A stretch of DNA of 64,000 bases from Sphyrna mokarran (Eukaryota). A program made the position numbers and the translations under genes. The stretch is taken from positions 3,844,001 through 3,908,000 of the forward strand of contig JAGIQG010000040.1 in assembly GCA_024679065.1 (NCBI GenBank), read 5' to 3'. Shown piece after piece: positions 7,791 through 60,017 of the stretch. The notes beneath the pieces are model-generated. The model searched no databases. It was not told the DNA's origin and worked only from the letters and a program-made list of their open reading frames with translations. The number at the start of each line of letters is the position of its first letter. Within the stretch, counting starts at the first letter, position 1.

Positions 7791-7872
7791 AGTTTTTGTG
7801 CTGGCACGTATCACTGTGGGTATACGCTGGGACCACGGTAGTTGAACCTCCCTTAACGCCTGTACAATAACC
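7791..7872 (+). other. TRDD: TCR delta D segment (coding 7819-7833, GGTATACGCTGGGAC) with 5' 12-RSS and 3' 23-RSS
   Basis: AGTTTTTGT(7791-7799)-12 bp-CACTGTG(7812-7818)-D-CACGGTA(7834-7840)-23 bp-ACAATAACC(7864-7872). Open in all three frames (GIRWD/VYAG/YTLG) and unlike the conserved TRBD GGGACAGGGGGC. Confidence 0.93.
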
Positions 7873-16612: not shown

Positions 16613-16661
16613 TATGATAAGCTAACGTTCGGCAGCGGCACCCAGGTGACAGTTGTGCCAA
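16613..16661 (+). CDS. TRDJ: TCR delta J segment 7, YDKLTFGSGTQVTVVP
   Basis: GGTTTCTGT(16585-16593)-12-TACAGTG(16606-16612); FGSG; donor GTGAGT at 16662. Confidence 0.93.
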
Positions 16662-17428: not shown

Positions 17429-17479
17429 CAACTAGAAAGCTTATCTTTGGCAGTGGAACCAAACTCACTGTAGAACCCA
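17429..17479 (+). CDS. TRDJ: TCR delta J segment 8, TRKLIFGSGTKLTVEP
   Basis: CGGTTTTGT(17401-17409)-12-CACTGTG(17422-17428); FGSG; donor GTAAGT at 17480. Confidence 0.94.
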
Positions 17480-20400
17480 GTAAGTGAAACGATTCTCTGC
17501 ACTTTGTGTCTGGTTATAGTTTAAGAAAGTAATTTCAAATTATAATCCACCTGTAATGAATCTTTGTCCCGTAATAGCTACTGTTGAATTGATGGGAGGG
17601 ACAGAGGACGAGCGAGAGAGGAGTGAAAAATTAAAATGTTCTGACAACTCTGTGTTAGAATTTACAAATAGCAAATTATTAGGCTCCTACAACGACGGAG
17701 GAGACCGTTAGGCCCACCGCTCTTGCTTCAGAACAATAGAATTATCATTATTAGTTTTACAGAACAGAAAGAAGCCTTGCGGCCCACTGTGCCTGCTCTA
17801 ATCATTAAACCCCTATCTATCCCAATCGCATTTTTCAGCACTTGGTTGTAGCCTTGTATGCTACGGCATAAATAATCTTTGAACTTGCATGCAAAGATCC
17901 CTCTGATTCTCTGCATTTTCTCACGTCCTACAGTTCATTTTACATTCCCTGCCTTGTTACCCCTCGCAAAATGCATCACCTCACACTTTTCAGATTTAAA
18001 TTCCGTTTGCCACTGGTCTACCTCTCTGACCAGCTCGCCCATATCGCCCTGTAACCTTTGCAAGTCAGTGACATTTAACCTCACAGGAAAAACATGTGTG
18101 CATCCTTGGCTTGACTTGGTGTGAAATTTATATCCAGCTCTCCAGAAATAATGCATATTAAATATCTTTCTTCTGTCCTCTGCGAGGTAAATATGATTCA
18201 GCTTCTGCAATGCCAAGCTTCTGTCTTGGAAAATGTTCCTGCACATTTACTAATCACTACAGTGAGACACCCACACTCTTCAATGAAATATGTGACCAGT
18301 AAGGATAAACTTACTTAATGTCATTATCTGCTGTGTGATGGACAGGGAGCTAGCATTATGTGGGAAGGCAATTGAGGACATTGCACTGATATAATGAATT
18401 TGCGCCGCTGAATATCCAGCTCAGCTCCTCCTAAAATTGTAGTGTGCAGTTTTTCTAGCTCCAGACCTTAAGTGATGTCATATTGGACTCACAAAGTGTA
18501 ATTTCATTTTCCTTTCTTGATGTGGGCATTTCTAATTGCCCACTGGGCAATTTCAGATTCCACAACGTTGCTTCTTGGATCCAAACAGCTGACAGCCTAT
18601 TTCCTTCCCCAAAGGAAGTGTTGATCCAAATGGGCATTTACAACCCATGGTAGATGTCCTATTTTCATTCACAAACTTGGCAATAGTAAATTCACTTTTT
18701 TATCCAAGTCATTATGTAGATTGTAAATTATTGTGGCTCGAGGATTGACCACTGAGGCATTCACTTGCAACAGATTGTTATCCTGAAAATACTCCTCTTA
18801 TACCAACTCTCTGTATCGATTAGCCAATCCTCTATTCATGCGAGTATATTACTCAAAAAGCATGAGCTCTGAATTAGCCCTTTGTCCAAGATCTTATAAA
18901 AAGCTTTTTGCTGCAAAGATAAGATGCCAACCATTGAATGGCAATGCCTTTTTTAGGGCATTGGTCCATAGTTGCCGTAGTTCTTACTTGAGGCTACATT
19001 TCGATCAATTTATTTGAAATTGCTCCAAGTGCTGGGATGGGAATTGAACGTATTTCTTCTGGGGAATTAGCCTAAATGCCTGTTCTACTAATCCAATGGT
19101 ACTGCCATTTCGCTGCAACCATCCCATAAAGTTACATGAAGAATGTTTAGTGACAGTTTCAATAAAAAGTTTGTTAGAGTCGATATCACAGTGATGAATT
19201 TTGTGTTGTAAGCTTTATGAAAGAAGTAATATTCAGTGCCATCACTCAGCACTGTCCTTCATGGAGATATATAGTGTAGAGAAAGATAGAAAATAGGAAC
19301 ATGAGTAGGCCATTCGACAGTTAGACCCTGCTCTGCCATTCGACACAACAATGACTGACCCTGTAACTCAACACTATACTAGCCTTCTCCTCATAATTCT
19401 TGAAGGCTTTAGAGTATATTAACATATTTCCTTTTAAAATGTACTCACTGACTTCGCATCCACAAACTTCTGTGGTAGACAACTACAGTTTTATCAACCT
19501 CTAAATGAAGATTTTTTTCCTCATCTCAGACTTAAATATCAACCCTGTACACTGAAACTTTGATCCCTTTTTCTCGATCCCACCCCGCCAAAAAAACAAC
19601 AAAATGCCTGCCTCCCGTCTGCTCATCCCTGCTAGAATTCTATACATTTCAATGACATCACCTCGCATGTTCTAAACTCCACATGAATACAGATGCAATC
19701 GCCTCTCTAAAATGACAATCCTGCCATTCCAAGAATTAGTCTAGTGTGCTTTTTTCTGCACTCTTTTTATTCCAAGTGTATTCTTTCTTCGGTAAGGAAA
19801 CCAAAATTGCACACAATATTAGCAATATTATCGTCAAAAAAGGTATCGTCAAAATTGGATTTAGGAAATGTTTTAATGGAAGAATGTGAGATATATGTGG
19901 CAAAATGTTTCCTGATTTCGCCCTCGAAAGCCTTAAACATTAAAAATCGTTTAAAATCCAATTTGCTGAAATAAATCTTGAACTCCCCAAACAGTAGCAA
20001 ACGTTCCTGTTTATCAACCTTCTCCGTTTGGGAATGATTAACTCACTCCTTAACTATATTCCAGCGTTTTAGAGTTAAACATCATTAATTAGTGTTAATC
20101 GGGCTCTCTCAACATATATACAGCTTACAGAGTAAAATGTCTTCTCCTCCTACTCTGTTCATGGATTTTTTTGAATGCTGATTTTTAGTTTTACGAGAAA
20201 CAGAATATAAATGTTGCCAGCTCTGATTGTGAACTCTTCTTTATTTCAATAATTGATCTCAGATCTTCACATTGAAACATAAATATTAAGACCCGAATGT
20301 ATTTTTCAGTGTCTCACTGTCTGTGCATTAAGACATTCATTGATTAATCCTTAGTCTTAGCATATGGACATTTATTAATAACATGGTTCATTGATTTTTA

Positions 20401-24493: not shown

Positions 24494-24712
24494 AGAGAGA
24501 AGGAGAGAGAGAGAGAGGCATCACTCCTCAGCCTCCTCTGTGCCGAGGGAAAAAGGCCAAACTTATCCAGTCTCAGCATTCGGTAAATTAATGGAGAAAC
24601 TTACATATTGTTAAGACACAGAAAAAAATGCAGTCTAATCGAATGTCATAGCATGTTGGAGGAGGCACCCTGTTGGGTTCTGACTCTTTCCTTTCATTTC
24701 TACAATTTTCAG

Positions 24713-25024
24713 AGGCGAGAGACCCGCAAAAACCAAAATTGAGCGTCTTTTATCCGCCAGTGCCACCGGATGCCTCCAACATCAACACAGCTGCAGTATG
24801 CTTAGCCTCGGACTTCTCCCCCAAGGAAATCGAGCTCTCCCTGTACACGGGATCCGGCCAGGAGGTCAATGTGACAAGATCCAATGTCCTATTGGAGAGC
24901 GGGAATTACAGGAGCTCGGGTTTCCTGCCTTTCCGCCAACTCGAGATATCGCCAAACATCACGTGCAAGGCATTTCACAATAATCATAGTTACTCAATAA
25001 ACATCTCACCCACAGCTCAAATTG
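24713..25024 (+). CDS. TRDC: TCR delta constant region exon 1 (Ig C1 domain)
   Basis: Acceptor ttttcAG at 24711-12; ARDPQKPKLSVFYPP..AAVCLASDFSPKEIELS..SSGFLPF..NITCKAFHN; 312 bp, phase 1-1; donor GTAAGT at 25025. It follows a D segment and J cluster and resembles shark C-delta as recalled. Confidence 0.95.
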
Positions 25025-28080: not shown

Positions 28081-28490
28081 GTATGTGCTTTATTCAATAT
28101 TTATCAAAGTAAAATACTTGCAAATAGATTAAGAAGTGGACAAATATGCACGGATAGAGACGGGAGATCGAATGATAAACATATAGCGAGATGGGGAGAG
28201 AGATAGATTGTCACACAGGGTGAGTGAGAGAGATATATAAATCCAGGGAAAGAGAGGGGGCAGGGGTTTGGAGAGGGAGACAGAAATTCAGATTGAAGGA
28301 GAGATGAAGATAGATAGACAGCAGGCAGGCGGGCCGGCAGATGAACGGACGGACAGGGATGGACAGACGGACGAAAGTCAAGCAGTTAAGTAATAAAAAA
28401 AATCACATTAGTGGTAAATAGTTGTTTTTCAATTCCAAATAATATATACATTAAACCAGACTTATCATTCTTTTTCTCTTATTTTGGCAG

Positions 28491-28601
28491 ATCAAATAAG
28501 GGCGAACTCTTTGTCTTTGACGGTGATGGGGCTAAGAATTTTGTTTTTCAAGAGCATTGCCTTCAATGTCATGATGACGGCCAGGGTGTGGCTATTTTGA
28601 G
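28491..28601 (+). CDS. TRDC: TCR delta constant exon 3 (transmembrane), stop TGA 28598-28600
   Basis: DQIRANSLSLTVMGLRILFFKSIAFNVMMTARVWLF* has the R and K residues typical of TCR alpha/delta TMs; donor GTAAG at 28602. Confidence 0.95.
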
Positions 28602-53717: not shown

Positions 53718-55009
53718 CATAGTGACACTGAACACGGGGAGAGCTGGATAAATACTTGATTATTGCGAGGATTCCAGCCACACTGATATAGAACACGAAG
53801 AGATCTGTACAAAAACCTGAACATGGTGCAGACTACAGACACAATGATACAGAGCACGGAGAGAGCGACACAAAAACTTGATCATGGTGAGGTTTACAGA
53901 AGATGTGGAGATGCCGATGTTGGACTGGGGTAAACACAGTAAGAAGTCTCACAACACCAGATTAAAGTCCAGCAGATTTATTTGGGAGCACAAGCCACCA
54001 TCTTTCGGAGAGCTGCTCCTTCATCATGGTATTTCAGTTCATAAACAAGGCATATAAAGACACAAGCTCAATTTACAAAGTAGTGGTTGGAATGCGAGTC
54101 TTTACAGGTAATCAAGTCGTAAAGGTATAGACAATGTAAGTGGAAAGAGGGTTAAGTGTAGGTTAAAGGGATGTGTATTGTCTCCAGCCAGAACAATTAG
54201 TGTGATTTTGCAGGCCCGGGCAAATCATGGGGGTTTTAGATAGCGTGACATGAACGCAAGATTCCGGTTGAGGCCGTCCTTATGTGTACAGAAATTGGTT
54301 ATCAGCCTGTGCTCAGCGACTCTGTTTTGTCGTGTGTCATGAAGGCTGCCTTAGAGAACGCTTACCTGAAAATCAGAAGCCGAATGCCCGTGGTCGCTGA
54401 AGTGTTCGCAAATAAGAAGAGAACATTCTTGCCTGGTAATTGTCGAGTGGTGCTCATTCATCTATTGTTATATCTCTGATGGTCTCCCCAATGGGACATC
54501 CTTTTCTGCAGCTATTGTTGGCTGAGTTGTAATGTGCTACCATGTATCTGGTGCATGGTGTTCTCACATGAGTTGATGGTATCGGTGTCGATGATCCAGC
54601 ATGTCAGGGTTGTGTCGTGTCATGGTCACTGTTCTCCTGAAGGTTGGGTAGTTTGCTGCGGACAATGGTCTGTTGAAGGGCCTGGCCTTGCAAAGTCTCA
54701 TCAACTGTCGTGGCTGGAGACAATACGCATCTCTTTAACTTATGTTTAACCCTCTCTCTACTCGCATTGTCTGTACCTTTAAGAATTGGTTACCTGTAAA
54801 GACCATTAGTTTGTAAATTGAGTTTGTGTCTTTATATGCCCTATTTGTGAACTGAAATCCCACTCACCTGATAAAGGAACAGAGCTACGAAAGCCAGTGG
54901 CTTGTGTTACCAAATAAATCTGTTTGACTTTAACCTGGTGTTGTGAAACTTCTTACGATGATCATAGACCCGCAGTGATGCAGAACACGGAGAAATCTGT
55001 ACAAAAAAC
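53718..55009 (+). repeat. Tandem array of 23-RSS units (61-bp period), interrupted by a Penelope element
   Basis: CATAGTG-23-ATAAATACT (53718-53756), CACACTG-23-ACAAAAACC (53779-53817), CACAATG-23-ACAAAAACT (53840-53878), CGCAGTG-23-ACAAAAAAC (54971-55009). Confidence 0.9.
53901..54956 (-). mobile_element. Penelope-like retroelement fragment (GIY-YIG C-terminus) with an inverted terminal copy
   Basis: Minus strand reads IGET..MNEHHSTITRQECSLLICEHFSDHGHS..HKDGLNRN; ~53938-54180 is an inverted repeat of ~54730-54956. Confidence 0.8.
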
Positions 55010-55055
55010 TGACCGTGGCAAGGGTTACACATTCCTGTATTCCTCACCATGTCCA

Positions 55056-55213
55056 GGTATTTGTACCTTTCTCTCCATGCACTATATCACCATATCTGTA
55101 GCACTCAACGTGTTTACATTTTTGTACAGCCCTCTCTCTGTTCTGTATTGTTGTTGTCTGTAACACCATGTTCAAGTTTCTGTACAGCTCTCTCCGTGTT
55201 CTGTATCACTGTG
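55056..55213 (-). repeat. Second tandem 23-RSS array (three units, 58-61 bp period)
   Basis: Nonamer-23-heptamer units at 55175-55213 (CACAGTG/ACAGAAACT), 55117-55155 and 55056-55094; the last two have degenerate heptamers and related spacers. Confidence 0.85.
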
Positions 55214-55529
55214 CTCTGTGCCGACTCAGTGCGCAGTAATACACTGCAGAGTCACTCGGTTGCAGTTTGGAGATCGTTAACCGGCTGAATTTTTCAAGGG
55301 GATCGACAGATGCAGAAATTATTCCCCGGCAGCGTTTTCTTTGCTCGTCTCGCCTGACTTGTGTCTCTTAGGCAGGTATTTTGAGGTCTGTCCTGGGGAA
55401 TGCCGGTACCAGTAGAGTGTATTCACAGTTATTCACAGGGATATTCACAGTTTAAAGTAATGGTGTCGACAGTAGCAGAAGTTTGGAGAGATGGGTTCTG
55501 GGACACAGATAAACCGGATGCAGCAGAAC
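55214..55529 (-). pseudogene. NAR-TCR supporting V-delta pseudogene (leaderless, downstream of the NAR-TCR J)
   Basis: ctatAG|GSAASGLSVSQNPSLQTSATVDTITLNCEY..NCEYT.YWYRHSPGQTSKYL..SKLQPSDSAVYYCALSRHR with stops and frameshifts; perfect heptamer in its 23-RSS. Confidence 0.85.
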
Positions 55530-56455
55530 CTATAGGATAAAGCTAAAGATTTCTGTGATGATTTTACCAGCCTTGCATGTTAGTTTGCCCGAGGAAACAT
55601 AATCGCGTCCATAGCTGGCCATTTTGCCGTAATTGTTTCATTGAAGGGTGTGCCACATTTATTCACTGCAGTTGGGGAGACAGAATCATCTCTGCATTCT
55701 ATATTATACCGAATCTGCAGAACAGAAATAGGCCATTTCGTCCACTGGCGTGTGCGTTTCTTAACACTGCACGCGTGCCCACTCCCCTCTCACACTCGAT
55801 CCCTACACTCTGAGCACTGTGTCCTTCTCCCTCCTCGATTATTCAAGCCTTAACACAAATTCCTTATGCCATTTACTGCAACCATGCCAGGCGAACTCCA
55901 CATTCTTCCTAATTTCTTCCTTTTATCTTAATAGCATCACATATAAATACTTCCTGACACTGAATCATTTTCTCTACATGTATATTAATGAAACTATAAC
56001 ATAGTGTTTAACATTTTTTTTCCTAATTGGTCGGCGCAACATCGAAGGCCGAAGGGCCTGTTCTGTGCTGTAATGTTCTATGTTCTATTTATGTCAACAA
56101 CAAAAGCAGAAAAATGCTGGAAGATCTCTGCAGGTCTGTCAGCGTCTGTGGAGACAGAATAGAGTCAATATTTCCAGTCTATTTGATCCTTTGTTAGAGC
56201 AAGCCTTCCCTACAGCTTGCTTCATCTTTGGCGATCGCGCACTTCTGCAATCTGGCCTCACATTCGGACCCGATTCCAGTTTCCTTGTCTACTCCCAAAC
56301 CTAAAACTGCAATTGGAAATCTTCCACAGGAACCACCACTCCCCCCACGCTGCTGTTGTATCACAGAGGATTGGATTGAGGCAGATTGCAAAAATGAACT
56401 GACGGTAAACACTAACCAGGACAGTCGGCAACAAAGGGTATTTGGATTCACTTAC

Positions 56456-56508
56456 CGGCTGAGACAGTCACCAGCGCCCCATAATCATCTGTAAATCTCC
56501 ATCCTCCA
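56456..56508 (-). pseudogene. NAR-TCR/IgH-like J segment with a 23-RSS, GGWRFTDDYGALVTVSA
   Basis: RSS 56509-56547 reads CATTCTTGT-23-CACTGTG on the minus strand; ends VTVSA G|GTAAG (phase 1); the W/F-GxG motif is degenerate. Confidence 0.8.
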
Positions 56509-56867
56509 CACAGTGATAGAACTCTCAGTCAGCCCAATACAAGAATGACTGACACCTCAACTTGCCGGGAAAACATTACCAAATAAACAGCATTTATTGA
56601 TTATTCAGGGGTGAAAGATCAATCATGAACAATGATTGTTTTCTAACCATCATTCAATCAAACAGTTCCTTGGGACACCGAGAGCCCTTGGCAAAACGGA
56701 CCTGGAAAATTCAATGAAAGATAACTGAACGGAAGAAATTACGACGAAATTAATCCATGTTGCAATGATAATGACAACAACCCGATCAGTTATATTCCGC
56801 GCCCTGGGAATTATTGCTTTGATTGTTCGGAGATATTTAAATATTTGCCCTTCTCTCTTCCACTGCG

Positions 56868-57312
56868 GTGTTCCATATCTGTAGTACCAACTGAGCTTTA
56901 CAGTAATAGGTGGTTGTGTTTTCAACTCTCACATCGTGAATTTCCAGCGAAAACATAATTGCAGCTTTATTCACCGACAGAACAAATATCCCTCCGCTGG
57001 AGATTCGCTCCCACTCTGTCCCGGTCTGGTTTTGTCTGAAGAAATGACATTTTCTAAATCATAACCACCAGAGAAAACAAAGATGATGTGAGAGATTGAA
57101 ACTCCTCCTGATCACCACTGCCGGACTCTGCACCACTAACTCACTGCAAGATCCTGGAAATTAAACGCAGAGAGTTTAATGGACCATCAGAGCGGAACCA
57201 CACAACGGGGCTGAAAACCCAGGCAGCGTCTGCAATTGGAATGTACTGGGGTGCTTTATATTCAATCCACGCAGTGTGGGTTAGTTTGATCGGTACTCAC
57301 TGGGTAAACACA

Positions 57313-58422: not shown

Positions 58423-60017
58423 ATGTCACAGGATTTCAGGGCTTCCATTCTTATTCTTTTCCTGAAGCTCGGTGAGTTGTTTAACAAGCATTGGAATGCA
58501 GATTTGCAAAAATAATATCGAGGGATGGCTGGATGTAGGAAAAGAAGTGAGACTAGGGGCAATTAAGGGAATAATAGAGGATGGACGGATGTATGTTTTT
58601 CTTGAACATTCACTTTGCTTATTCCGGTTTACAATAGTTTATTGTAACTGAAAGGGGGCATTGAACAGAGGGAAACATTGGATTATATATATTCAAAGAT
58701 CTGAAAGCGTCAGAGTAAATTTGAAAGTTTCTGGAAACATTTCCAACTCTGACCTCTATGCATAGGAATAGTGTACATGTGAAGTGACATTAAATCAAAT
58801 ATTTCTGCATCCGTACTCAGGCCTTTTTTAATGTACGTTGTTTAGTTATGGGTATTAAATCTAATGAACAGCAGCATGGTCTTGGGAAGGGTAAAGGAGG
58901 ATTTATTGGAATGGTCTCTGTGATCAGGATCCTTAGGTTTCAGGGCACACTGAAATAACAGGAGTCCCTTTCTCAGAATACAGGCAGGTAACAGAAGATC
59001 TGAAAGTGATGTTGATGTCTCAACTGTGTAAATTGTTCCAAGCGACAGAAAGCTGGGTAACCAGGGCGGGTTATCCAGCTGAGGAGAATGGAAAAATGAT
59101 TCAAAGGAAGAATTTCCTTTTTTGAAATGGTGGTCCAAGCAGATTTCATGCTAACTGCTAAGAGGAAGCAGGATGAATATTTGGAGAGAAATATTTTCCA
59201 GATTATGCAGAAAGAGTAGCGGTTGGGGGAAATGATAAATCTGTCATCTGTCAATAGGTGACATGTGTGTTTGCCGAATTACCCATTCCTTTTATTCATT
59301 TGTGGCTTCCGTTCTAATTATTTTCCTAAAGCGACTGGGTGTCGCTGGCTGGCCAGCACTTCCTGCTCAGTCTTAGTTGCCCGAGGGCAATTTGGAGGCA
59401 ACCACAATTGTCTGGAGCCACTTATAGGCCAGACCAGGTCAGAAGGGCAGATTTCCTTCCCTGAAGAACAATAGTGAACCAGATGGGTCCATACGACAAT
59501 CGACAATGATTTCGTTGTCAATTCTTAGTTCCAGTTTTTTTACTGTTTTCAAATCCTGCCGTGGCGGGATTCCTGGCTGAATTTCTCCATTAATTAACTA
59601 GCGATAACATCAATGGGCCACCGCCTATTATGATGAGGAGATGAAAGTTTTTTTAATAGTGTCCCATGTCAAAACACCTATTTATTTTCTGTTTATTATG
59701 TATTTGAAGGATTGTGTTATTCTGATACTGTTACGCAACTTACATCATCGGTATCATGTTTGGAGGAAGAACGCATGGTGTTGCCCTGTTCATTTTCCAC
59801 AGACCGCCGCCGCTACGATCTGCTCTGGTACCGACAAAAAACGGGGGAGGAACCGGTTTTTTTAACCAGAAGGAATTCGGAAGGACAAACAGAGAAAGCT
59901 GAGCATGTGGGAGGCCGATTGTCTTCAATGCTGCAAGCATCGAATCGTTTCTACAGTTTAACGCTGACAGATGTACAGCTGAGTGACAGTGGCATGTATT
60001 ATTGTGCGCTGAGCATT
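58423..60017 (+). CDS. Apparently functional TCR alpha/delta V gene (leader 58423-58471, V exon 59710-60017)
   Basis: Leader MSQDFRASILILFLKL G|gtgagt; ~1.2 kb repeat-expanded intron; DTVTQ..LPCSF..LWYRQ..SDSGMYYCALSI is open; CACCGTG-23-ACAGAAACT at 60018-60056. Confidence 0.9.

What the first reader, a model, noticed from the sequence alone, without database searches (positions are those of the whole stretch)
53718..55213. Tandem arrays of complete 23-RSSs behind both NAR-TCR supporting V genes
Seen: each supporting V is followed by 3-4 copies of a ~61-bp unit (heptamer, exact 23-bp spacer, nonamer, ~22-bp linker). In the plus array, distal copies are better than the first (CACACTG/ACAAAAACC, CACAATG/ACAAAAACT). 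Presence behind both diverged paralogues suggests the array predates their split. Established: V genes normally have one RSS. Inference: the array could be a RAG-loading platform or decoy tuning supporting-V usage, or allow serial rearrangement from distal to proximal RSS in a chain needing two V(D)J events. A neutral minisatellite is also possible. The linkers have no 12-RSS, so they are not D segments.
Basis: partly seen in the sequence, partly recalled or inferred. Interest (0 to 1): 0.85.

Follow-up and report, generated by a model that had tools for sequence, protein, structure and literature searches.

The report
Decayed RSS minisatellites behind two V pseudogenes
Two dead, tail-to-tail copies of a shark T-cell-receptor V gene are each followed by several tandem copies of the DNA signal that normally directs V(D)J cutting; here the copies are decaying relics, but the repeat seems to be a family trait of this gene type that may be unreported.

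Summary
Seven ~61-bp units (heptamer, 23-bp spacer, nonamer, ~22-bp linker) lie between two convergent V segments: P1-P3 (53718-53900) and P4 (54971-55031) on the plus strand, M1-M3 (55213-55032) on the minus strand. Their consensus is a perfect 23-RSS.

"Complete RSSs" is overstated. Only 3 of 7 units (P2, P3, M1) keep the essential CAC and a good nonamer. The heptamer is the least conserved segment (54%, against 73-75% for spacer and nonamer).

Both V segments are pseudogenes. A 1,055-bp very-high-copy repeat (53902-54956) splits the plus array. V plus array forms an old inverted duplication (about 68% identity).

The array is not private to this relic:
- An ORF from another source reads through five units behind an open supporting V.
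- Contigs of three organisms hold M1-like units at a 61-bp period.
- A sawfish gene model reads into a second unit.
- The scan noted the same arrays on other DNA of this genome (s1-887384, s1-886788; unchecked).

Best reading: a hitch-hiking RSS minisatellite of the supporting V-delta family, non-functional here.

The parts
53419..53717 (+). Supporting-type V-delta pseudogene (V+). It has a splice acceptor with no leader and a CDR1 cysteine, but several stops and frameshifts. No NAR cassette lies upstream.
   Evidence: Translations. tblastn of NAR-TCR gene models gives 54-58% identity over FR2-FR3. NAR V hits occur only on the minus strand at 56768-57175.
53718..53778 (+). Unit P1: CATAGTG / 23 / ATAAATACT + 22-bp linker. 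CAC is lost and the nonamer is poor.
53779..53839 (+). Unit P2: CACACTG / 23 / ACAAAAACC + linker. One of the three units that keep CAC and a good nonamer.
53840..53900 (+). Unit P3: CACAATG / 23 / ACAAAAACT + linker. One of the three units that keep CAC and a good nonamer.
53902..54956 (.). Very-high-copy interspersed repeat inserted into the array. It has internal inverted arms at 53939-54221 and 54680-54956.
   Evidence: Word depth reaches 4.9 million, against 13-30 in the flanks, in runs of four organisms. Loose ends lie at 53902 and 54956. Arms are 78% identical, against 68% for the V+array arms, Fisher p = 0.0018. Partial copies lie at 49914-50003 and 45519-45554.
54971..55031 (+). Unit P4: CGCAGTG / 23 / ACAAAAAAC + linker. 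CAC is lost. Its linker end abuts the linker end of M3, which is the palindrome axis.
55032..55094 (-). Unit M3: TATGGTG / 23 / ACAAATACC + linker. CAC is lost.
55095..55152 (-). Unit M2: heptamer place reads AACAACA, the unit is 3 bp short, nonamer ACAAAAATG. Dead.
55153..55213 (-). Unit M1: CACAGTG / 23 / ACAGAAACT + linker. This is the V-proximal RSS of the minus V and the best-kept unit.
55214..55526 (-). Supporting-type V-delta pseudogene (V-). It has stops and frameshifts, and its CDR1 is broken by a 10-bp repeat at 55420-55452.
   Evidence: tblastn gives 69-76% identity in FR3 to Cetorhinus, Heterodontus and Mustelus models.
56456..56508 (-). Context: NAR-cassette J relic with a 23-RSS (heptamer at 56509-56515 on the plus strand) and a splice donor.
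56768..57175 (-). Context: NAR-TCR V relic (..YYCKA) upstream of V-.
   Evidence: tblastn gives up to 75% identity to P0001.

Best explanation
The stretch is a fossil. An ancestral NAR-TCR supporting V-delta gene had its 23-RSS plus the next ~22 bp copied head to tail into a 61-bp minisatellite, so every unit starts as a potential RAG signal.

Inferred history:
1. The array travelled with the gene when the family multiplied.
2. At this spot V plus array was copied in inverted orientation, giving V+ P1-P4 | M3-M1 V-.
3. Both V segments then died.
4. A high-copy transposable repeat landed between P3 and P4.
5. The units have since drifted without regard to RSS function.

In live family members the array probably stays RSS-like through two forces. 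The V-proximal unit is under selection as the working RSS. Unequal exchange or conversion among units keeps spreading its sequence to the rest. Under this view the distal units need no use of their own.

Shown here: the units, their decay, the pseudogenes, the inserted repeat, the inverted duplication, and similar arrays elsewhere.

Inferred only: the origin by tandem duplication, the homogenisation, and the lack of function of distal units in live genes.
For: - Units and period.
- RSS excess over chance: (10 hits against 0.96 expected).
- Pseudogenes.
- Uniform or inverse decay: mean pairwise identity is heptamer 54%, spacer 73%, nonamer 75%, linker 62%. Heptamer plus nonamer against the rest gives permutation p = 0.63. 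CAC is kept in 3 of 7 units.
- Inserted repeat: (depth and loose ends). It is younger than the inverted duplication: 226/289 against 339/500 identical, p = 0.0018.
- Arms align in register through V and three units.
- Family trait, P0007: a 219-aa ORF with an open supporting V, then five units with heptamer-compatible and nonamer-compatible codons at a 61-nt period, 5 of 5 each. It aligns to both window arrays by tblastn.
- Family trait, reads: 'goes back 47/50' joints at 55210/55213 to 55164. In X2, the run whose in-between letters were listed, 14 and 11 letters lie between, which gives a 61-bp period. The same joint occurs in contigs of organisms A and D.
- Low copy number: depth over M1 and P2 is only about 3-15 times the flanks, so this is a small family and not a genome-wide repeat.
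- Single RSS behind the two other V families in the window.
- X1 contigs match both arrays with 0 differences.
Against: - In P0007 all five heptamer and nonamer places look intact, while same-frame unit pairs differ mainly in linker and spacer codons. That is the pattern expected if the RSS motifs of distal units were selected. The numbers are small, and it is seen only at the amino-acid level.
- The sawfish model P0011 and the bamboo-shark model P0004 read through an RSS and a linker that resemble the window's. Array or linker may therefore have lasted since the shark-batoid split, which is long for a neutral repeat.
- Decay in a pseudogene says nothing about function in live genes.
- P0007's V lacks the CDR1 cysteine (W instead), so I have not shown an array behind a V that is certainly functional.
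- The X1 run may come from the same animal as the assembly, so it is not independent support.
Confidence: 0.65

Rival explanations
1. The array is a selected feature of live supporting V-delta genes, and only its relic is seen here. Several same-sense 23-RSSs would raise RAG capture of the supporting V, act as decoys that damp its use, or allow a distal cut followed by a second cut nearer the V.
For: - The array is present in several sources and apparently specific to this V family.
- P0007 has 5 of 5 heptamer-compatible and nonamer-compatible places, with most differences in the linker and spacer.
- The sawfish model P0011 suggests great age.
- The consensus unit is a perfect 23-RSS.
Against: - A cut at a distal unit leaves n x 61 bp of RSS sequence on the V coding end. 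That is not a multiple of three, and in the V frame a canonical heptamer followed by A reads a stop. Most gene models end ..AQ followed by a stop at that place. Such joints would therefore be unproductive.
- In this window the RSS motifs are not preferentially kept.
- No joints were examined.
- The two rearranged-looking products among the 17 hits (P0014, P0009) show no unit sequence in CDR3.
Confidence: 0.22
2. The inverted duplication itself was made by RAG in the germ line. A cut at the heptamer of a distal unit left a hairpin or fold-back coding end. That end was copied back through the array and the V, giving the tail-to-tail pair.
For: The axis between P4 and M3 (55031/55032) lies within 2 nt of the linker/heptamer border in both arms, which is where RAG cuts. 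By chance this would happen about 5 times in 61. Germ-line RAG activity in sharks is known; this is recalled, not checked here.
Against: - The arms hold 4 and 3 units, not equal numbers.
- With about 30% divergence the axis cannot be placed exactly.
- Fold-back inverted duplications arise without RAG.
- There is only one case.
Confidence: 0.1
3. The units are not RSS copies at all but part of a transposable element or satellite that happens to look like an RSS, or the arrays grew independently behind each V.
For: Other first-reader notes report arrays of RSS-like motifs elsewhere in this genome (s1-887607, s1-887451; unchecked). A true high-copy repeat does sit in the array.
Against: - The first unit of each array is the RSS that abuts the V coding end.
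- Depth over the units is about 3-15 times single copy, against up to 4.9 million word depth for the real repeat.
- blastn finds the unit nowhere else in the 64-kb window.
- The arms align in register.
Confidence: 0.03

Closest known systems
Canonical 23-bp-spacer recombination signal sequence (RSS) of a TCR V gene segment
   Same: Each unit has a heptamer, a 23-bp spacer and a nonamer. The consensus is CACAGTG / 23 / ACAAAAACN. The first unit abuts the V coding end.
   Different: V segments normally carry one RSS; here there are 3-4 head-to-tail copies with a 22-bp linker. At this locus 4 of 7 have lost the CAC, which the abstract of PMC12711392 (seen in the listing) calls strictly conserved.
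[quoted passage not shown]
   Same: Homology to the second V domain of NAR V + V-delta models. The V exon is leaderless behind a splice acceptor. The plus V has a CDR1 cysteine. A NAR V/J relic lies upstream of the minus V. The defining features are taken from passages of PMC1845163.
   Different: Both copies are pseudogenes. The plus copy has no NAR cassette. They lie downstream of C-delta, one inverted. The accessible papers do not mention RSS arrays. The primary paper (Criscitiello 2006) and the nurse-shark locus paper (PMC7909615) were not held.
Minisatellites (tandem repeats with 10-100-bp units)
   Same: Head-to-tail units of constant period, about 30% diverged from one another, and carried along in duplications.
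   Different: The unit is a functional signal of the V(D)J recombinase and starts exactly at a coding end. Copy-number polymorphism was not examined.
Cryptic RSSs and V-replacement signals
   Same: Extra RAG-target-like sites near a V segment.
   Different: Cryptic RSSs are single chance-like sites, often inside the V. These are full duplicated copies outside the coding end, all in the same sense.

Membership tests
23-RSS | Heptamer beginning CAC (consensus CACAGTG) | tested here: inconclusive
   Met in 3 of 7 units (P2 CACACTG, P3 CACAATG, M1 CACAGTG). Not met in P1 CAT.., P4 CGC.., M2 AAC.., M3 TAT...
23-RSS | Spacer of 23 +/- 1 bp | tested here: met
   Six of 7 units have 23 bp. M2 is 3 bp short overall.
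23-RSS | A-rich nonamer (consensus ACAAAAACC) | tested here: met
   0-2 mismatches in P2, P3, P4, M1, M2 and M3. P1 has 3 (ATAAATACT).
23-RSS | Heptamer abuts a coding end | tested here: not met
   True only for P1 and M1. The other five follow a 22-bp non-coding linker.
23-RSS | Cut by RAG1/RAG2 and joined under the 12/23 rule | not testable with these tools
   Needs joints from lymphocyte DNA or a substrate assay.
NAR-TCR supporting V-delta | Leaderless V exon entered by splicing from the NAR J | tested here: met
   A ..cctgcag acceptor lies directly before ..DSS.. at 53419. The NAR J relic ends in a gt donor at 56456.
NAR-TCR supporting V-delta | Conserved extra cysteine in CDR1 | tested here: inconclusive
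   The plus V reads ..CEYSGNCQYT... The minus V's CDR1 is broken by a 10-bp repeat.
NAR-TCR supporting V-delta | Lies downstream of a NAR V-(D)-J cassette | tested here: inconclusive
   Met for the minus V (NAR V relic 56768-57175, J 56456-56508). Not met for the plus V (no NAR V hit on the plus strand).
NAR-TCR supporting V-delta | Sequence kinship with known supporting V domains | tested here: met
   Of the 17 phmmer hits, the 12 whose sequences I read include 10 two-domain NAR V + V-delta models. The 10 looked up by name come from Cetorhinus, Heterodontus, Scyliorhinus, Chiloscyllium, Pristis and Mustelus (9 named), plus one unnamed ENA ORF, P0007, which holds the supporting V alone.
NAR-TCR supporting V-delta | Open reading frame (functional gene) | tested here: not met
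   Stops and frameshifts in both copies.
Minisatellite | Head-to-tail copies of a 10-100-bp unit | tested here: met
   TRF period 61. The repeat finder spacing 61, 61, 58-61.
Minisatellite | Copy number varies between individuals or paralogues | not tested
   The window has 3-4 units and P0007 has 5, but no two individuals were compared at one locus.

The most novel reading that the evidence does not exclude
Tandem arrays of same-sense 23-RSSs are an ancient, maintained attribute of NAR-TCR supporting V-delta genes, possibly older than the shark-batoid split. RAG would really use the distal signals, either as a landing pad that makes the second of the two required rearrangements more likely, or as a decoy or second-chance device. 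The relic pair here would further record a germ-line RAG cut at a distal unit that folded back into an inverted duplication.
Probability: 0.2. Interest if true: 0.85.

Novelty: new variant of a known kind. Interest (0 to 1): 0.55.

Why it matters
A V segment with several complete RSSs in a row is not part of the textbook picture. It would give a natural experiment on how RAG chooses among adjacent signals, through scanning, competition or decoys, in the one receptor chain that needs two V(D)J events.

My searches of the held library found no description of such arrays. The primary NAR-TCR papers were not held, and supplements were closed, so a mention there cannot be excluded.

This particular locus is a dead copy. 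Its value is as a dated outgroup:
- It shows that the array existed before an old inverted duplication.
- It shows what neutral decay of the units looks like (heptamer first), against which arrays behind live genes can be compared.

It also warns annotators. Three database proteins read through the RSS, or through the RSS array, as if it were coding: two gene models (P0004, P0011) and one ORF called on an ENA contig (P0007).

Tried and rejected
- D segments: rejected. No 12-spacer RSS lies in the arrays.
- Assembly artefact: rejected. The arms are only about 68% alike, and Logan contigs of run X1 match both arrays with 0 differences. X1 may be the same animal.
- One single large palindrome including the inner repeat: rejected. 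The inner arms are significantly less diverged, and the inner part is a very-high-copy repeat.
- Positional orthology of units (P1-M1, P2-M2, P3-M3): not resolvable. Identities of 67, 66 and 70% are no higher than cross pairs such as P2-M1 at 77%.
- A 12-RSS or 23-RSS on the opposite strand of the unit: none seen by eye, and none passed the thresholds of the scan.
- Homologue word searches gave nothing. One search used the plus-V piece (no candidates). One search used the P0007 array part (only itself among 104 candidates). One search used the reverse-strand ORF over M3-M1 (no candidates).
- Two scans of metagenome contigs with unit patterns gave 0 hits each.
- The search of earlier findings by sequence and by a second set of words gave nothing.
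- Papers PMC1458790 and PMC7909615 were not held.
- The species of the window was not determined. C-delta is 73% identical to the Mustelus asterias model.
Full report
WHAT IS THERE. The region 53419-55526 holds two V segments that point at each other. V+ lies at 53419-53717 on the plus strand and V- at 55214-55526 on the minus strand.

Behind V+ come three contiguous 61-bp units: P1 53718-53778, P2 53779-53839 and P3 53840-53900. Behind V-, read on the minus strand, come three more: M1 55213-55153, M2 55152-55095 and M3 55094-55032. A seventh unit, P4 (54971-55031), has plus orientation. It lies directly against M3, linker end to linker end.

Tandem Repeats Finder reports the 61-bp period (2.5 copies, 72% matches, score 162). 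The repeat finder gives the four plus-strand copies as one family and the minus-strand copies as two pairs with spacing 58-61. The MAFFT alignment of the seven units has the consensus CACAGTG, 23 bases, ACAAAAACN, then a 22-base linker (TGAACATGGTGAGGnnTACAGA), with a mean column identity of 79%.

MORE THAN CHANCE. The consensus 23-RSS pattern with up to three mismatches has 10 matches in the window. The shuffle expectation is 0.96 (largest 4; 0 of 100 shuffles reach 10). Four of the ten are P2, P3, P4 and M1. The others include the RSSs of the two other V segments (51246 minus, 60018 plus), the 3' RSS of a D segment (7834) and the RSS of the NAR J relic (56509).

HOW GOOD ARE THE UNITS. Only P2 (CACACTG/ACAAAAACC), P3 (CACAATG/ACAAAAACT) and M1 (CACAGTG/ACAGAAACT) keep the CAC. 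The other four have lost it:
- P1 reads CATAGTG with a poor nonamer.
- P4 reads CGCAGTG.
- M2 has AACAACA at the heptamer place and is 3 bp short.
- M3 has TATGGTG.

The abstract of PMC12711392, seen in the listing, calls the first three heptamer bases strictly conserved. So "complete RSSs" holds for 3 of 7 units.

Mean pairwise identity by segment is heptamer 54%, spacer 73%, nonamer 75% and linker 62%. Heptamer plus nonamer columns (65%) are not better kept than the rest (68%; permutation p = 0.63). The RSS as a whole against the linker gives p = 0.10.

THE V SEGMENTS. Both are pseudogenes with several stops and frameshifts. The CDR1 of V- is also broken by a 10-bp repeat (55420-55452).

A 58-residue open piece of V+ was searched with phmmer against 1.84 billion representatives and found 17 proteins. 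I read 12 of them. Ten are two-domain models in which a NAR-type V (..YYCKA) is followed by this V type. I looked up 10 by name. Nine come from Cetorhinus maximus, Heterodontus francisci, Scyliorhinus canicula, Chiloscyllium plagiosum, Pristis pectinata and Mustelus asterias. The tenth, P0007, is an unnamed ENA ORF that holds the supporting V alone.

tblastn of all 17 back on the window places the second domain on V+ and V-. It places the NAR domain only at 56768-57175 on the minus strand. Between that relic and V- lies a J relic with a 23-RSS and a splice donor (56456-56508).

Passages of PMC1845163 give the marks of NAR-TcRV-associated delta V segments: no leader, and a conserved CDR1 cysteine. 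V+ shows both (acceptor ..cctgcag before ..DSS.., and ..CEYSGNCQYT..).

The window is the 3' end of a TCR delta locus:
- a D segment at 7819-7833
- two J segments at 16613 and 17429
- C-delta at 24712-25023 and its transmembrane exon at 28475-28597

The relics lie downstream of C-delta. This agrees with the scan's note s1-887599.

THE PIECE IN BETWEEN. Laying Logan contigs of four runs from four organisms at 80% likeness shows word depths up to 4.9 million between 53902 and 54956, against 13-30 in the flanks. Loose ends lie at 53902 and 54956. This is a very-high-copy interspersed repeat. It has internal inverted arms at 53939-54221 and 54680-54956, and partial copies elsewhere in the window.

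Its arms are 78.2% identical (226/289). The V plus array arms are 67.8% identical (339/500). Fisher p = 0.0018. So the repeat came in after the inverted duplication and split the array between P3 and P4.

A 271-base contig of run X2 (organism B) covers 54931-55199, that is repeat end, P4, M3 and M2, with 36 other letters and 8 gaps. The whole relic is therefore older than the split of organisms A and B.

THE INVERTED DUPLICATION. A global alignment of 53250-53900 with the reverse complement of 55032-55700 runs in register from about 55 bp upstream of the V exon through the V and three units. So the array existed when the copy was made.

Unit-to-unit identities do not show positional orthology. 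P1-M1 is 67%, P2-M2 66% and P3-M3 70%, against P2-M1 at 77%.

The axis P4|M3 lies within 2 nt of the linker/heptamer border in both arms. That is the place where RAG would cut. By chance this is about 5 in 61. I record it as a lead, not a finding.

IS THE ARRAY PRIVATE TO THIS RELIC? No.

(a) P0007 is a 219-residue ORF from a 1,007-bp ENA contig with no name. It holds an open supporting V and then reads on through the flank. Dipeptides that a CACAGTG gives in the three frames (QW, TV, HS, QW, TV) stand at residues 118, 138, 158, 179 and 199. Nonamer-compatible tripeptides stand at 127, 148, 168, 189 and 209. That makes five of five units at a 61-nt period. tblastn aligns this tail to both window arrays, for example residues 155-215 to 53709-53891 at 56%. 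P0007's V has W in place of the CDR1 cysteine, so I cannot call it functional.

(b) In one search, contigs of X1, X2 and X10 (organisms A, B, D) show joints that go back from 55210/55213 to 55164. In X2, the only run whose in-between letters were listed, these number 14 and 11, which gives two M1-like units 61 bp apart. One of the two X2 forms implies a changed heptamer (CAG..) and the other a canonical one.

(c) Depth over M1 (98-331) and P2 (54-94) is a few-fold to about 15-fold that of the flanks. This points to a small family, not a genome-wide repeat. The "other letters" at 53783, 53798, 53804 and 53854 move P2 and P3 toward the consensus unit.

(d) The sawfish model P0011 reads V, RSS and linker, and then residues that fit a second heptamer-like start. 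The bamboo-shark model P0004 reads V, RSS and the start of a similar linker.

(e) Two first-reader notes on other DNA of this genome report the same arrays: s1-887384, 437 kb upstream, "behind every NAR-TCR supporting V-delta", and s1-886788, 237 kb upstream. I saw only their titles and could not read that DNA. They are leads, not support.

By contrast, the two other V families in this window have one RSS each.

All cross-species statements rest on amino-acid read-throughs and on the tables. No lymphocyte joints were examined. The X1 run may be the animal that was assembled.

READING. The locus is a decayed RSS minisatellite carried by two dead copies of a supporting V-delta. The RSS motifs here decay at least as fast as the rest of the unit.

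For the family, I think the most likely account is hitch-hiking. The proximal unit is kept by selection as the working RSS, and exchange among units spreads that sequence. A cut at a distal unit would leave n x 61 bp on the coding end. That is out of frame, and a canonical heptamer followed by A reads a stop in the V frame. Most gene models do end ..AQ at that place. Such a joint would be unproductive.

Three things count against pure neutrality: the five-of-five intact motif places in P0007, its differences concentrated in linker and spacer codons, and the possible age shown by the sawfish model. I put the selected-array reading at about 0.2.

LITERATURE. Full-text searches for NAR-TCR with RSS terms, for tandem, multiple or duplicated RSS phrases, and for heptamer + nonamer + minisatellite found no description of RSS arrays behind V segments. 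How each paper was seen:
- Passages only: PMC12227049, PMC3457774, PMC1845163.
- Abstract in a search listing only: PMC12711392.
- Not held: Criscitiello et al. 2006 and PMC7909615.
- Recalled only, not looked up: Deiss et al. 2019.

Supplements were closed and may bear on the novelty claim.

VERDICT. At this locus it is a fossil. The family-wide array is a new variant of a known kind and is worth a proper survey at the live genes that the scan has flagged elsewhere.

Noticed in passing
window 53902-54956: A very-high-copy interspersed repeat with about 280-bp internal inverted arms. It is present at huge depth in contigs of four different organisms. Partial copies lie at 49914-50003, 50038-50082 and 45519-45554.
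   Followed up: partly
window 55031/55032: The axis of the tail-to-tail unit pair P4|M3 falls within 2 nt of the linker/heptamer border, the place where RAG would cut. The inverted duplication may have a fold-back or hairpin origin.
   Followed up: partly
window 55420-55452: A 10-bp tandem repeat (TATTCACAGT, 3.1 copies) sits in CDR1 of the minus V pseudogene and breaks its frame.
   Followed up: no
window 51249-51563 (minus) and 59757-60017 (plus): Two open V segments of other families, each with a single 23-RSS and no array. The first is inverted downstream of C-delta, like the inverted V-delta of mammals.
   Followed up: partly
window 7819-7833, 16613-16660, 17429-17480, 24712-25023, 28475-28597: A D-delta segment with a 12-RSS and a 23-RSS, two J-delta segments (..FGSGT..), the C-delta exon and the transmembrane exon. 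The C-delta exon is 73% identical to the Mustelus asterias model.
   Followed up: partly
window 55013-55285 (plus) and 53720-53881 (minus); proteins P0004, P0007, P0011: The strand opposite the RSS array is open in long stretches (a 91-aa ORF). Two database gene models (P0004, P0011) read through the RSS, and one called ORF (P0007) reads through the array, as if coding. This is a source of spurious proteins.
   Followed up: partly
window 56456-56515 (minus): The NAR-cassette J relic carries a 23-spacer RSS, as note s1-887615 says. No D was looked for.
   Followed up: no
proteins P0008, P0010 (Scyliorhinus canicula models): The supporting V domain reads ..LNWEYSG.C.. with W where the canonical first cysteine is expected, while the CDR1 cysteine is kept.
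   Followed up: no
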